Shown in pieces: positions 9,970 to 26,361 of a stretch of 64,000 bases of DNA (the first letter of the stretch is position 1; every line of letters begins with the position of its first letter). The DNA is from Podarcis muralis (taxonomy: Eukaryota), in the NCBI RefSeq assembly GCF_964188315.1, contig NC_135672.1:13082001-13146000 (forward strand), given 5' to 3'. The translations under genes were made by a program, and so were the position numbers. Below the pieces are notes generated by a model. The model saw only the letters and a list, made by a program, of their open reading frames with translations, ran no database searches and was not told the origin of the DNA.

Positions 9970-10140
9970 TCCTTTTAAGCCGCGCCGTCGAGCGAGCAGG
10001 CCAATGGCGGGGGCGCAGGAAGCGCGTCCCGGGAAGGCAGGCGGCGGAGGGACCCGGCGCTGCTGCCTGGAGGGGGCTGGAACTGCCGCTTGGCCCGGCC
10101 CCGGGCCGGCCTAAATTTAGCCCCGCTATAAAAGGAAGGC
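9970..10140 (-). promoter_or_regulatory. KLF2 proximal promoter: MEF2 site CTAAATTTAG (10111-10120) with adjacent A/T box, CCAAT box (~10002), TATA-like TTAAAAGG (~9971-9978)
   Basis: Minus strand ccttttatagcggggctaaatttaggc resembles the mammalian KLF2 shear-responsive element as I recall it (cttatataccgcggctaaatttaggc). Lies in a CpG island at ~8600-10500. Confidence 0.85.
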
Positions 10141-11346
10141 GGTCAGCGCAGGAGAAGCAGCAGCGGTGGCGCGCAGAGAGAGAGGCCGAGCCTCCTCTCC
10201 TCCTCCTCCTCCTCCTCCTCCGGCATCGGACCTTCCCTGCTCGGCTGCAGATCCCACAGCCCCCCCCCCGGCACTCTTCACATGCTCGGGGTACCCCTCG
10301 CTTAGCCAGCTGGCTCCTTGCGCGCTCTGCGCGTAAAGGCATTCGCTGGTCGTCTTGCGCGCCTGAGCCCCGGCACCTCTTTGGCCGGCTCCCCCCTCGC
10401 CAATAAGTCTGGGTGGCGGGCAGCACCCCCCCCGTGGGGGCTCTTGAAGCGGGTGGCCCGTTTGTTCAAGATCGGTGGGTGCGGAGCGACAAAGCGGACC
10501 CGCTGCTAATCCGGTTCCCCCGCTGACCGCGCGCCTTGCTGGTGCCTCTGAGCATGTTCAGGGTGCCTTTCCCGGGTGTACAGAGCAAAGAAAACAGCGT
10601 TTTGTTTTGTTTTAGCAGAGGGGGGTTATTATGGGATGAATGCTCCCCATGCAAGGCCGTTTTTTCCACAGCATGCAAGTCTCTCTCTCTTACACACACA
10701 ACCTATTTATTTACGCATTTATTTTCTTCCGTTTCGTATGAAACATCGCTCAGCAATTATGCAACAACATAAAACCACTTCAACGAGAATGGCACGCCGT
10801 ATAGAATACGGCTTCATAAATCATAACCATCCTGATTTACTCCTTTCCAGGAGGTGGCAGCCCCCTGACCCACTAGTGCTAATTGAGTTTGCAGTCCTCA
10901 TCTGGAAGAACTGCTATTGGATTTTCCGTGGAAAAAGCCTTCCCAGATTCCATGGGGAAAATAATATGGGCCCCAGAGGACGTGGTGAATGAGGGGGAGG
11001 AGCCCCCAGCCCCACACAAACCCTGGGTGCACCCCCAGGGTCAGAAGGGCCTGTGGCTGGGAGGCGGAGGCTTATAACAACAGCCCTGCAATACAGTTCA
11101 CACTCTTGAGTGGTTAACAACAGCCCTGCTGTGTTGTCCAGAGCTATTAGACTTCATTTACAGGCTGGAACTGAGAGCAACAACTTAGCAAGAAGCCTGT
11201 ATGATCATCAACAACAACAACAATTTAATTATCTGCCACCCATCTGTCTGTGTTGCCCCAGTCACACTGGACAGCTCCCAATGGAATATTAAAAACACGA
11301 TATGAGGTCAAAGAGTCATACAGGGCTGTCTTCTAAAAGCCATATA

Positions 11347-11587
11347 CAGTGGTATCTCGGGTTATGAACAGCCCTGTTAATGAACTATTTGGTTTACGTA
11401 CTCCGCAAAACCGGAAGTAGTGTCCCGGTTTGCAAACTTTGCCTCGGTCTACGAACTGAATCTGAATGGTGGAAGGGCACTGGCAGCGGGAGGTCTTGTT
11501 AGGGAAAGCACACCACGGTTTAAGAACGGTTTTGGTTTAAGAACGGACTTCAGGAACAGATTTGGTTCGTAAACCGAGGTACCACTG
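11347..11587. mobile_element. Tc1/mariner (Tigger-like) MITE inserted into an L2 3' fragment
   Basis: TIRs cagtggtatctcgg / cgaggtaccactg; TA TSD on both sides. Confidence 0.9.
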
Positions 11588-11822
11588 TAGTCGTTTATCT
11601 TCTTGACATCTGGTGGGAGGGCGTTACACAAGCCGGGCGCCACCACCGAGAAGGCCCTCTGCCTGGTTCCCTGTAACCTCGCTTCTCGCAGGGAGGGAAC
11701 CGCCAGAAGGCCCTTGGAGCTGGACCTCTGTGTCTGGGCAGAATGATGGGGGTGGAGACGCACCTTCAGGGATATAGGACCCAGGCCATTTAGGGCTTTA
11801 AAGGTCAGCCCCAACACTCTCT
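11588..11822 (-). mobile_element. L2-clade LINE 3' fragment (continues left of the MITE to ~11300)
   Basis: Translation VLGLTFKALNGLGP...RAFSVVAPGLCNALPPDVK, the L2 RT C-terminus. Confidence 0.85.
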
Positions 11823-11859
11823 CTTTCACTCTGTTTCTTTATTAATGCTTTATACGTTT

Positions 11860-12245
11860 AGTGCGTTTCCGAGCACAATTCAAAGGGTTGGTTCTGACCT
11901 TGAAAGCCCTAAATGGCCCTGTATCCCTGAAGGAGCGTCTCCACCCCGGACACCGGGGTCTATCTCCCAAGGGCCTTCTGGCGGTTCCCTCCCTGTGAGA
12001 AGAGAACAGGGAACCAGACAGAAGGCCTTCTTGGTGGTGGCGCCCTCCCTGTGGAACTCCCTCCCGTCAGGTGTCAAGGAAATAAACAACTGACTTTTAG
12101 AAGACGTCTGAAGGCAGCCGTGTTTAGGGAAGCTTTTCATGTTTGATGTTTTACCCTGTTTTTAATATTTTATTGGGAGCCGCCCAGAGTGGCTGGGGAG
12201 GCCCGGCCAGGTGAGCGGGGTATAAGTAATAAGTTGTTGTTGTTA
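11860..12245 (+). mobile_element. L2-clade LINE 3' fragment with tail
   Basis: Same L2 motif, ending gggagccgcccagagtggctgggg...gggtataagtaataa. Confidence 0.85.
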
Positions 12246-12365
12246 ATGCATTTCAAAAAACCATCCCGTCTCACTGCTTCCCAGTAACATAAGCTTAAAA
12301 CACACACACAGAGAGAATGTTTTCTTATATTTTGACTTTGCTCTGGCCTGTTTAAATACGGCCTT

Positions 12366-23727: not shown

Positions 23728-23772
<45 letters not shown>
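23728..23772. repeat. (AC)n microsatellite
   Basis: Direct read. Confidence 0.95.
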
Positions 23773-23777
<5 letters not shown>

Positions 23778-25439
23778 CCAGCAAGGTGTTTGCAGCAACA
23801 GGCACATGTTGGTGGCGGCTTCTGTTCTGAGAATCAGCAGAGAAGCTGCTCACTGTAACCGCATTGAAGAATTCTCACCCCTGATGGGAGAGACAACAAC
23901 AGGGTGTGACCTTCTGTAGACCAAGGTTGTGGCTCAGTCCCCAGCCTGCTTGCAGAGGTCAAAAGCAAAGGGGCCTTTTTCAGGAAGTGTGCCAAGGCCA
24001 GGTAGAAAGGTATGGGGCAGTTTGGACGGAGGTGCAGCAGCGTAGCTCTGAAAGCGAGGGTCCGTGAGGACGAGGGAAACCAGGTTGTGCCAAGGAGACC
24101 CTCCAGGAACTCTGCAGGGATGTGGAAGCCCCTTCCCCAATTTCACAGCGCACCGATAGACCCTGTAGCCTTTGCCCACACTTGTGCAAAATCAGGTGTG
24201 AACGCCTTTGGGGGGGGAAAGAACCACACAAAGCTTTGCGCTCTGAAATTTCGCTCTTTGAAAGCCAGCAAGTTTTTGATGTGGGACTTGAATGCTTTTT
24301 GCACAGAACTCTTGGGGAAGAGATTTTGCAGCGCTAGCTGAGATCCCAGTTTGCAGTTGGCCCCTCTTTTTTTGCGTCCCTGCCCCGTGCAAAAGTAATA
24401 ATAATAAAATATTCACCTGCTGTCCAGCCTTGCAACTTTTCTGAGCGGAGGGACACGGTTTCGCTCTCCGCTGCAAGAATGGTCTGCAGCGCTGGTGGAA
24501 GGGGAGGCAAGGAAAAAATTATGTGCAGTGAGCAACGCAGATTCGGCCTTTTGCTTCTAAAGGGGAGAGATGGGTAATGTTCCCGCTTGGAGCCAAAAAG
24601 AACCTTTGATGCCTTTTCTTTTGGGACCCTAGGTAGGCCAAGAGAGACCTCAATGTCAGCAAAAATTTGCAGGCCTGGAGGACTGTGGGACAAAGTGGCA
24701 AATCTGGTGGCGCAGCGTCCCGTCCCCCCAGAATGCACCCTGACTGTCCTGTTTTCGCCATCTTCAGCAAGGGTGGCTGGGAGGAAGAACCGCCGCCCCA
24801 GAAGCGCCTCTTACAGTGGTTGCACAATCTGGGCCTCTCTTAATTTATTTTTGAGCTCAGAGGAAATTCGGCACAAAGGAAGCGCGTTCGGCGTCGAGGG
24901 CATCAACACAGGCAGGTGATTCTTGCAGCTGATTTGCATCGCGCTGTCTTCCTTTCTGCATGGCTGCTTGATTCCAAACACTTTGCTTTTCCTTTTTGGT
25001 GTGTGGGTGTTTTCTTTCAGGAGAGGGAAGGAGGGAGGGAGAGAGAGACACGCACACAGAGAGAAAATTCAAGCCAAACACGCCCCACCCATCTAATCCT
25101 GCATCCCAGCATCCTTGTTCTCTCAGCGGCCAGAAAGATGCCCCAAAACAAAAGTTCACAACCATCTCCTGTGCCTTCCAGCAACTGGCAGTCAGAAGCA
25201 TCTACGTTCCTGCCTTGGAGACAAGAGCAGAGCCATTGTGGTTTGCAGCCACAAATTTGTCTAATAGTTTAAAAGGCATCGAAACTGGTTGAGCGCCACT
25301 GCGAGTCCTGCAGCTTAACTATGCGCCTTGCGAAGGTGACTTTCCTTTTATCTGATCTGAATTGCCCAACGTTCAGCTTGTAGATTCGTAGAGTTGGAAG
25401 GGAGCCCCAAAGGCCATCCAGTCTGACCCCCTCCCACCC

Positions 25440-26005
25440 GGTAATGCCGGAATCTCAACCAAACTGCCTATCCAGAGTGGCAGATGCTCTGGTTGTCTCC
25501 TGCTTGGACTACTGCAACGCGATCTACGTGGGGCTCCCTTGGAAGGTGACCCGGAAACTACAACTAATCCAGAATGCGGCAGCTAGACTGGCGACTGGGA
25601 GTGGAGACCACATAACACCAGTCTTGAAAGACCTACACTGGCCACCAGGATGTTTCCAAACACAATTCAAAGTGTTGGTGCTGACCTTGAAAGCCCTAAA
25701 CGGCCCAGTAGACCTGAAGGAGCATCTCCACCCCCATTGTCCACCCCGGACACCGGGGTCCCTCTCCCAAGGGCCTTCTGGCGGTTCCCTCCCTGTGAGA
25801 ACTGAGGTTGCAGGGAACCAGGCAGAGGGCCTTCTCGGTGGTGGTGTCTGCCCTGTGGAACACCCTCCCATCAGATGTCAAGGAGATAAACAACTATCTA
25901 ACTTTTAGGAGACACCTGAAGGCAGCCCTGTTTGGGGAAGCTTTTAATGTTTGATGCTTTATTGTGGTTTTAATATTCTGTTGTGAGCCACCCAGAGTGG
26001 CTGGG

Positions 26006-26052
<47 letters not shown>
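25440..26052 (+). mobile_element. L2-clade LINE fragment with (AAT)n tail
   Basis: Translation [37 protein letters not shown], the classic L2 RT C-terminal motif. Confidence 0.9.
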
Positions 26053-26322
26053 TAATTTCCTGCATTGCAAGGGGGTTGGGCTAGACGACTCTCCCTTCCA
26101 ACTTGGCCAATCTATGGTCAACCTGTCTGTCCAGAAACTAGCCGGTTTTGAGGCCTCCTTGTGTGGCAGAGGCTCTTGAAGCTGACCCCGTTTGAGGTGA
26201 ACAGAGCTTCCTTTCGCCATCTCCCCAGAGAAAACCAAGCGGTTCTTGAAGCCTTTTACAGAGGGATCTCCAAATCCATTGCTCCTTCTGCTTTGCAATT
26301 CTCTTTCTCTTTGCTGCTGCTG

Positions 26323-26361
26323 CTTTATATACGGCTCCTAAAAATATCCCCGCCCTGATAG
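26323..26361 (-). promoter_or_regulatory. GATA + GC box + MEF2-like site + 6 bp + TATA module
   Basis: Minus strand ctatca-gggcgggg-ATATTTTTAG-gagccg-TATATAAAG. MCAT tggaatg at 26591 and a CACGTG E-box are nearby. Confidence 0.6.

What the first reader, a model, noticed from the sequence alone, without database searches (positions are those of the whole stretch)
10111..26347. The same MEF2 + 6 bp + TATA module occurs three times upstream of KLF2
Proximal (+ strand): CTAAATTTAG-ccccgc-TATAAAAGG (10111-10135), pointing away from KLF2. Distal 1 (- strand): TTAAAAATAA-cttggg-TATATAAAG (17464-17440). Distal 2 (- strand): ATATTTTTAG-gagccg-TATATAAAG (26347-26323). The spacer sequences differ but the spacing is identical, and each TATA is followed by GCAGC/GCTGC-rich sequence. 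None lies in a repeat I recognise. The proximal copy corresponds to the known mammalian KLF2 shear/MEF2 element (from memory: TTATATAC-CGCGG-CTAAATTTAG). Inference: a fixed-spacing MEF2-TBP grammar reused as distal KLF2 enhancers or as promoters of unannotated transcripts, including a divergent transcript from the KLF2 promoter. I know of no description of such distal copies.
Basis: partly seen in the sequence, partly recalled or inferred. Interest (0 to 1): 0.75.

Follow-up and report, generated by a model that had tools for sequence, protein, structure and literature searches.

The report
Known KLF2 MEF2-TBP enhancer modules
The three MEF2-plus-TATA modules upstream of this lizard's KLF2 gene are real and conserved, but they are the lizard copies of the KLF2 promoter element and two blood-flow-responsive enhancers (KLF2-41, KLF2-66) that a February 2026 preprint already described.

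Summary
All three modules sit at the stated coordinates. In the 64-kb window, strict MEF2 and TATA motifs pair only at a 6-bp spacing, and shuffled sequence gave no matches.

The window is from a lacertid lizard. KLF2 lies on the minus strand with its ATG at 9923.

- **Proximal module:** invariant in 9 sauropsids, with the spacer length fixed and the spacer letters free.
- **Distal 1 (17.4 kb):** conserved the same way in 4 squamates and 2 birds, 7 to 10 kb upstream of KLF2.
- **Distal 2 (26.3 kb):** carries the GATA/ETS/MEF2/TATA motif string printed for the mammalian KLF2-66 enhancer.

A bioRxiv preprint (10.64898/2026.02.04.703710, February 2026) describes exactly this. [quoted passage not shown] Both halves are needed in transgenic mice, and TBP binding rises under shear stress.

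The promoter-of-unannotated-transcripts alternative found no support. Three RNA runs gave zero reads on every unique part of 12001-18000, which includes the region downstream of distal 1.

Two modest additions come from this work. A KLF2-66 orthologue exists outside mammals. The orientations are the same as in human: the distal copies point toward the gene and the promoter copy points away.

The parts
10111..10135 (+). Proximal MEF2-TBP double motif of the KLF2 promoter. MEF2 site CTAAATTTAG 10111-10120, spacer 10121-10126, TBP/TATA motif 10127-10135. It reads on the strand opposite to KLF2 and lies 188-212 bp upstream of the KLF2 ATG.
   Evidence: Conserved in 9 sauropsids with a fixed spacer length. 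The same MEF2 10-mer is the mutated site in the mouse Klf2 promoter (PMC4108324). The preprint gives the module as 110-134 bp upstream of the human TSS.
9971..9980 (-). Candidate core-promoter TATA-like element of KLF2 (GCTTAAAAGG), about 50 bp upstream of the ATG. A CCAAT box lies at ~10001-10008 and ETS-like CTTCCT at ~10022. The start site itself was not mapped.
   Evidence: Sequence and motif scan. By analogy with the separate core TATA 31 bp upstream of the human TSS noted in the preprint. Inferred, not shown.
6981..9923 (-). KLF2 coding region. Exon 1 starts at ATG 9923, exon 2 is ~9518-8717, and exon 3 is ~7156-6981 including the stop codon.
   Evidence: ORFs and splice context. The exon 2 translation is 91% identical to Zootoca vivipara KLF2, E 1e-158.
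17440..17464 (-). Distal 1 MEF2-TBP double motif, orthologue of the KLF2-41 enhancer module. MEF2 site 17464-17455, spacer 17454-17449, TATA 17448-17440. It lies 7.5 kb upstream of the KLF2 ATG and points toward KLF2.
   Evidence: Near-identical modules lie at the syntenic place in Hemicordylus, Eublepharis, Rhineura and two birds. It matches the KLF2-41 core printed in the preprint supplement.
17391..17681 (-). Conserved core of the distal 1 (KLF2-41-like) enhancer. It has ETS-like sites at ~17547, 17526 and 17503, an RBPJ-like TGGGAG at 17509, no GATA motif, and a conserved GGATCCCCTC just after the TATA.
   Evidence: BLAST blocks to Hemicordylus (74% over 296 bp), Rhineura, Eublepharis and birds. 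Alignments. Motif scan.
26323..26347 (-). Distal 2 MEF2-TBP double motif, probable orthologue of the KLF2-66 enhancer module. The MEF2-like half ATATTTTTAG is at 26347-26338, the spacer GAGCCG at 26337-26332, and the TATA at 26331-26323. It lies 16.4 kb upstream of the KLF2 ATG and points toward KLF2.
   Evidence: By eye, the module and its left flank match the KLF2-66 lines printed for human, tenrec and Tasmanian devil in the preprint supplement.
26318..26450 (-). Core of the distal 2 (KLF2-66-like) enhancer. It has two GATA motifs (CTATCA at 26446 and 26361), ETS motifs (CAGGAAAC at ~26440, CAGGAAGT at ~26419) and a CCAAT-like ATTGG at 26399.
   Evidence: Sequence and motif scan. GATA motifs in -66 but not in -41 or the promoter is the pattern the preprint reports.
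15776..15908 (-). Conserved non-coding block between distal 1 and KLF2. It contains a STAT-like TTCNNNGAA motif (15847-15839) whose centre varies between species, and an E-box CAGGTG.
   Evidence: 81% identity to Rhineura, and also found in Lerista, Hemicordylus and two birds, in collinear order. No RNA reads.
14033..14068 (-). Short, deeply conserved non-coding core inside a wider block (13835-14272).
   Evidence: 94% identity to Lerista and 83-86% to two birds, collinear.

Best explanation
The three modules are the lizard orthologues of the three known cis-regulatory elements of vertebrate KLF2: the promoter element long called the tripartite palindrome or shear-stress response region, and the KLF2-41 and KLF2-66 upstream enhancers. 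Each carries one MEF2 site and one TBP (TATA) motif at a fixed distance. That distance is 6 bp between the 10-mer and 8-mer cores, which the preprint counts as a 3-bp spacer between its longer motifs.

From the published mouse and human work, MEF2 and TBP bind side by side on this composite site. Both halves are needed for endothelial enhancer activity, and TBP occupancy rises under fluid shear stress. TBP there acts more like a sequence-specific co-factor than as part of a pre-initiation complex.

What is shown here is the presence, rarity, fixed geometry, orientation and deep conservation of the modules in sauropsids, the enhancer-specific motif company (GATA only in distal 2, RBPJ-like only in distal 1), and the lack of stable RNA from distal 1. 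What is inferred from the literature is binding, flow dependence and enhancer activity in the lizard.
For: - **Rarity:** 2 strict and 1 near-strict match against 0.00 expected. Only spacing 6 is populated among spacings 0-20.
- **Proximal module:** both halves are invariant, with a fixed spacer of free letters, in 9 sauropsids.
- **Distal 1:** the same pattern holds in 6 sauropsids at syntenic positions 7.5-9.8 kb upstream of KLF2, with collinear conserved blocks between it and the gene.
- **Literature:** the preprint describes the same three-element architecture, its functional tests and its genome-wide rarity. Its printed KLF2-41 and KLF2-66 cores match distal 1 and distal 2 motif for motif.
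- **Motif company:** GATA motifs occur only in distal 2 and an RBPJ-like motif only in distal 1, as reported for -66 and -41.
- **Orientation:** the strands agree with the human entries in the preprint's Table S4, where the promoter copy is opposite to the gene and -41 runs with the gene.
- **RNA:** zero reads on the unique sequence around and downstream of distal 1 in three RNA runs. This fits the weak Pol II/TFIIB/TFIIE signal reported at the enhancers.
Against: - Orthology of distal 2 to KLF2-66 rests on my reading of short printed, machine-read sequences, not on a computed alignment. No second sauropsid sequence covering that region could be fetched: it lies beyond the 10-kb flanks, and the 10 kb upstream of TPM4 in Crotalus and Falco hold no copy.
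- No binding, chromatin or reporter data exist here for the lizard.
- The RNA negative covers one 6-kb stretch only. The tissues are unknown and KLF2 expression in those runs was not checked.
- The source is a preprint, not yet peer reviewed.
Confidence: 0.87

Rival explanations
1. The distal modules are TATA-box core promoters of unannotated stable transcripts (a lncRNA, a small-protein gene or an alternative upstream KLF2 first exon), and the proximal copy drives a divergent transcript.
For: - The TATA motifs are canonical and directional.
- About 15 nt downstream of the distal 1 TATA is conserved (GGATCCCCTC).
- The Rhineura annotation has a called 250-residue gene overlapping the distal 1 orthologue and ending at L001:3632.
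- Distal 2 is followed by an ATG and a GTAAAA donor-like site.
- The preprint says initiation at the enhancers is hard to rule out.
Against: - Three RNA raw-read runs (about 11-13 million reads each examined) gave zero depth on 17201-18000 and on 15001-15800. Only repeat copies were covered.
- Conservation of the 15.8-kb block runs through the Rhineura stop codon and looks like a set of binding sites, not like coding sequence.
- The preprint reports only weak Pol II, TFIIB and TFIIE at the enhancers.
- Unstable enhancer RNAs would not be seen in ordinary RNA-seq, so low-level initiation stays open.
Confidence: 0.1
2. The three matches are chance co-occurrences of A/T-rich words.
For: The pattern was defined after looking at the sequence, and distal 2 needs one mismatch.
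Against: - About 0.003 pairs are expected, and 0 of 100 shuffles gave any match.
- No other spacing is populated.
- Two of the three are conserved letter for letter across more than 250 million years of sauropsid divergence (my estimate of the time), while their spacers vary.
Confidence: 0.01
3. The copies are recent duplicates of the KLF2 promoter, or parts of a mobile element that carries the module.
For: Same module, same spacing, and similar GC-rich sequence after the TATA.
Against: - There is no similarity between the three flanks beyond the module, and no other copy in the window.
- Both distal sites are unique islands between transposon copies.
- Each has its own orthologues and its own motif company.
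- An ancient duplication before the vertebrate radiation cannot be excluded, but it would leave no trace testable here.
Confidence: 0.02

Closest known systems
MEF2-TBP double motif of the KLF2 promoter and the KLF2-41 and KLF2-66 enhancers (Fleisinger et al., bioRxiv 10.64898/2026.02.04.703710, February 2026)
   Same: Same gene, same number of elements, same order from the gene, same geometry, same orientations, and the same accompanying ETS, GATA and RBPJ-like motifs. The core strings are near-identical.
   Different: - The distances are compacted: 7.5 and 16.4 kb in the lizard against 41 and 66 kb in human.
- The preprint's printed conservation panel for -66 lists only mammals, down to a marsupial, so a squamate copy extends it.
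- No functional data exist for the lizard.
KLF2 promoter shear-stress response region, or 'tripartite palindrome', with its MEF2 site (Huddleson 2004; Kumar 2005; Sohn 2005, as cited in the preprint; MEF2 site letters in PMC4108324)
   Same: The proximal MEF2 10-mer CTAAATTTAG is identical to the mouse site, and an A/T-rich TATA-like motif follows at the same distance.
   Different: None of substance. The lizard module sits somewhat further from the ATG, and the lizard start site is not mapped.
Drosophila MEF2-TATA boxes of antimicrobial peptide genes (Clark et al. 2013, PMC3807682)
   Same: MEF2 and TBP cooperate on A/T-rich DNA. The fly sites GCTATAAAAGC and TCTATATAAAGC resemble the TBP halves here, GCTATAAAAGG and CGTATATAAAGC.
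   Different: In the fly, one overlapping site at the core promoter serves both proteins. Here there are two separate sites at a fixed distance, and they lie in enhancers and 110-190 bp upstream of the start site.

Membership tests
KLF-type MEF2-TBP double motif element (bioRxiv 10.64898/2026.02.04.703710) | A MEF2 motif directly followed by a TBP motif with a precise short spacer (3 bp, range 2-4, between HOMER motifs) | tested here: met
   All three copies have 6 bp between the 10-mer MEF2 core and TATAWAAR. This is the geometry of the human strings printed in the supplement. Only three spacer positions vary across species.
KLF-type MEF2-TBP double motif element (bioRxiv 10.64898/2026.02.04.703710) | Both halves and the spacer length are conserved more deeply than the surroundings | tested here: met
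   Met for the proximal copy (9 species) and distal 1 (6 species). Not testable for distal 2, because no second sauropsid sequence could be fetched.
KLF-type MEF2-TBP double motif element (bioRxiv 10.64898/2026.02.04.703710) | Rare in the genome and tied to KLF genes | tested here: inconclusive
   Within this 64-kb window the only copies are the three upstream of KLF2. The rest of the genome was not available.
KLF-type MEF2-TBP double motif element (bioRxiv 10.64898/2026.02.04.703710) | The promoter copy lies well upstream of the start site, with a separate core TATA | tested here: inconclusive
   The module lies 188-212 bp upstream of the ATG, and a separate TATA-like GCTTAAAAGG sits at 9980-9971. 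The start site is not mapped.
KLF2-41 enhancer | Sequence orthology, ETS motifs, RBPJ-like motifs and no GATA motifs | tested here: met
   Syntenic, collinear conserved block in squamates and birds. The core string agrees with the printed KLF2-41 lines for opossum, chicken, Xenopus and zebrafish. ETS-like and TGGGAG motifs are present and there is no GATA motif.
KLF2-66 enhancer | Sequence orthology and multiple GATA motifs plus ETS motifs next to the double motif | tested here: met
   Two CTATCA motifs, then CAGGAAAC and CAGGAAGT, then the module, in the same order as the printed KLF2-66 sequence. The orthology was read by eye from short printed strings, not computed.
KLF-type MEF2-TBP double motif element (bioRxiv 10.64898/2026.02.04.703710) | Bound by MEF2 and TBP, TBP binding increased by shear stress, and both halves needed for endothelial enhancer activity | not testable with these tools
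   No ChIP, CUT&RUN or reporter data for this species. Published for mouse and human only.
TATA-box core promoter of a stable transcript | Transcripts begin ~25-30 bp downstream of the TATA | tested here: not met
   For distal 1 only: zero reads on 17201-17600 in three RNA runs. Distal 2 and the proximal plus-strand direction were not tested.

The most novel reading that the evidence does not exclude
The TBP half gives each element a direction that matters. In lizard, birds and human the two enhancer copies point toward KLF2 and the promoter copy points away. About 15 nt after the distal 1 TATA is conserved like an initiator region. The enhancers might therefore fire short, unstable, gene-directed RNAs from a real TATA-positioned start. 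That would make them TATA-driven enhancer-promoters rather than plain factor platforms. The preprint leaves this open, and ordinary RNA-seq cannot see it.
Probability: 0.15. Interest if true: 0.45.

Novelty: already known. Interest (0 to 1): 0.25.

Why it matters
KLF2 is the main flow-induced protective factor of blood-vessel lining. [quoted passage not shown]

The lizard locus shows that the whole three-element layout is kept in sauropsids, including spacing, orientation and partner motifs, while the distances shrink five-fold. That supports the published model and gives compact natural versions of both enhancers for reporter tests. It does not open a new question.

Tried and rejected
**Duplication.** I looked for similarity between the three islands by BLAST and found none beyond the module. 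The duplication reading was dropped.

**Protein gene downstream of distal 1.**
- The 15.8-kb conserved block has a splice-acceptor-like start and overlaps the end of a called Rhineura gene.
- Its conservation runs through the stop codon and centres on a TTCNNNGAA motif.
- No RNA covers it.
- I read it as a non-coding regulatory block.

**Orthologues of distal 2.** I tried the TPM4 side.
- Crotalus (L007) and Falco (L008) upstream flanks hold no copy.
- In Crotalus a 23-kb gap between the two fetched loci stays unread.
- In Falco the neighbour is not KLF2.
- Two bird KLF2 loci reach only distal 1.
- The Zootoca KLF2 protein was not on record for a contig look-up.

- KLF2 was searched with exon 2 alone, by reference. 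The exons were not joined.
- The human enhancer letters printed in the preprint's supplement were only read, and were not sent to any tool.
- The runs listed as 'RNA?' (X1-X14) behave like low-coverage DNA and were not used as evidence of expression.
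Full report
**The observation**

Two fit YTAWWWWTAR-N6-TATAWAAR exactly, and the third has one mismatch in the MEF2 half. One hundred dinucleotide-preserving shuffles gave no match at either stringency.

The window holds only 10 distinct strict MEF2 sites and 18 TATAWAAR sites. 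About 0.003 pairs at one given spacing and polarity are therefore expected by chance. When all spacings from 0 to 20 are scanned, strict pairs occur only at spacing 6.

Both distal sites lie in unique islands of about 600 bp between SINE and LINE copies. The three islands share nothing detectable beyond the module.

**Context**

- KLF2 is on the minus strand. Its ATG is at 9923, exon 2 is about 9518-8717, and the zinc-finger exon ends at 6981.
- Exon 2, searched alone by reference, is 91% identical to Zootoca vivipara KLF2, so the window is from a lacertid lizard. The exons were not joined for any search.
- The next gene upstream is TPM4, on the plus strand. Its exon 1a ATG is at 31876 and exon 1b starts at 37656.
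- The two distal modules therefore lie in the 22-kb KLF2-TPM4 intergenic region and point toward KLF2. The proximal module points away from KLF2.
- On the KLF2 strand, a separate TATA-like GCTTAAAAGG lies at 9980-9971, about 50 bp before the ATG. The proximal module is therefore not the core TATA of KLF2.

**Conservation**

I fetched KLF2 loci with 10-kb flanks from five squamates, a turtle and two birds.

- **Proximal module:** present in all of them on the strand opposite to KLF2. Both halves are invariant, and the spacer is always 6 bp with varying letters.
- **Distal 1:** present on the KLF2 strand, 7.7 to 9.8 kb upstream of the ATG, in Hemicordylus, Eublepharis, Rhineura, a tinamou and a manakin. 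The two halves are invariant except for one base in each half in Rhineura, the spacer length is fixed and three spacer letters vary. About 100 bp upstream and 15 bp downstream are also conserved.
- **Other blocks:** further conserved blocks between distal 1 and the gene are collinear in these species.
- **Distal 2:** lies beyond every fetched flank. Flanks taken from the TPM4 side in Crotalus and Falco hold no copy. Its conservation inside sauropsids stays untested.

**What is known**

A full-text search found a preprint of 6 February 2026 (10.64898/2026.02.04.703710). It makes these points:

- It identifies two flow-dependent endothelial enhancers of KLF2, named KLF2-41 and KLF2-66.
- Mutating either half abolishes most enhancer activity in transgenic mouse embryos.
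- TBP binding at all three elements rises under shear stress.
- The motif is very rare genome-wide, but recurs at KLF4, KLF6 and KLF7.
- The promoter copy lies 110-134 bp upstream of the start site and is distinct from the core TATA.

The supplement prints the sequences. The KLF2-41 core and its chicken, Xenopus and zebrafish lines read as distal 1 does. The KLF2-66 core reads as distal 2 does: GATA, two ETS motifs, a second GATA, the MEF2-like half, a GAGCC-type spacer, then TATATAAA. I compared these by eye only and sent none of the human letters to any tool.

The motif company agrees as well. GATA motifs occur only in distal 2, and an RBPJ-like motif only in distal 1. The strands in the preprint's Table S4 agree with the lizard too: the promoter copy is opposite to the gene, and -41 runs with the gene. 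The mouse promoter MEF2 site is letter for letter the lizard one (PMC4108324).

**The promoter alternative**

One read-laying run was allowed. I laid two bulk RNA runs, one single-cell RNA run and one run of uncertain kind on 12001-18000. Every unique part had zero depth in the RNA runs, including 17201-18000 around and downstream of distal 1 and the conserved block at 15.8 kb. Reads lay only on repeat copies, at 95-99% likeness and mostly in part.

The negative has limits. It covers one stretch, the tissues are unknown, KLF2 expression in those runs was not checked, and unstable enhancer RNAs would be missed. It does agree with the weak Pol II, TFIIB and TFIIE signals the preprint reports at the enhancers. 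Distal 2 and the plus-strand direction from the proximal copy were not tested.

**Verdict**

It is already described, however, so the finding is a lizard instance of a known vertebrate regulatory architecture.

- **New here:** a probable KLF2-66 orthologue outside mammals.
- **New here:** a five-fold compaction of the layout.
- **New here:** orientations kept between lizard, birds and human.
- **New here:** a first, limited RNA negative at the KLF2-41 orthologue.

Noticed in passing
window 31600-32010 and 37656-37790 (+): TPM4 begins here, divergent from KLF2. The exon 1a ATG is at 31876, preceded by a CArG box CCAAATAAGG at ~31695-31704 and a MEF2-like TTAAAAATGG at ~31648. The alternative exon 1b ([14 protein letters not shown]...) is at 37656-37790 in a GC-rich island. 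The Crotalus 429-residue 'tropomyosin alpha-1 chain-like' model seems to read from exons 1a-2 through intron into exon 1b, which looks like a mis-model.
   Followed up: partly
window 15839-15847 (-), within 15776-15908: A STAT-like TTCNNNGAA motif whose three centre letters differ between lizard/Rhineura, Hemicordylus and Lerista while the flanks are kept. An E-box lies next to it. The block is also found in two birds and is probably another KLF2 regulatory block.
   Followed up: partly
window 13835-14272, core 14033-14068: A conserved non-coding block about 4 kb upstream of KLF2. The 36-bp core is 94% identical in Lerista and 83-86% in two birds.
   Followed up: no
L001:1-3632 (Rhineura floridana): A called gene with a 250-residue product and no Pfam hit overlaps the KLF2-41 orthologue and ends in the 15.8-kb conserved block. 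Conservation runs through its stop codon, so it is likely a spurious ORF on a non-coding or mis-modelled transcript.
   Followed up: partly
Depth is zero on 15201-15800 and 17201-17600 in three RNA runs. The rest of that interval (15801-17200) is mostly tandem repeat and SINE copies, and only those repeats drew reads.
   Followed up: partly
window 51649-52053 and 53140-53600 (+); 59184-61134 (-); 61331-61726 (+): TIMM13 exons (MASGNGDF...[15 protein letters not shown]; [15 protein letters not shown]). RAB8A exons lie on the minus strand, with exon 1 [23 protein letters not shown]1M1 exon 1 (MSASAVYVLDLKGKV) starts head to head with RAB8A. TIMM13 next to this group differs from the human order as I recall it.
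   Followed up: no
window 10125-10135, 17450-17439, 26333-26322: The TBP halves (GCTATAAAAGG, GGTATATAAAGG, CGTATATAAAGC) resemble the single overlapping MEF2-TATA sites of the Drosophila Mtk and Dro promoters (GCTATAAAAGC, TCTATATAAAGC) in PMC3807682.
   Followed up: no
runs X1-X14: Runs labelled 'RNA?' hold a constant 0.10-0.12 share of the words. In the one laid (X1), they cover repeats heavily and a unique stretch (13934-14217) at depth 2. They look like DNA or repeat-rich libraries rather than evidence of expression.
   Followed up: partly
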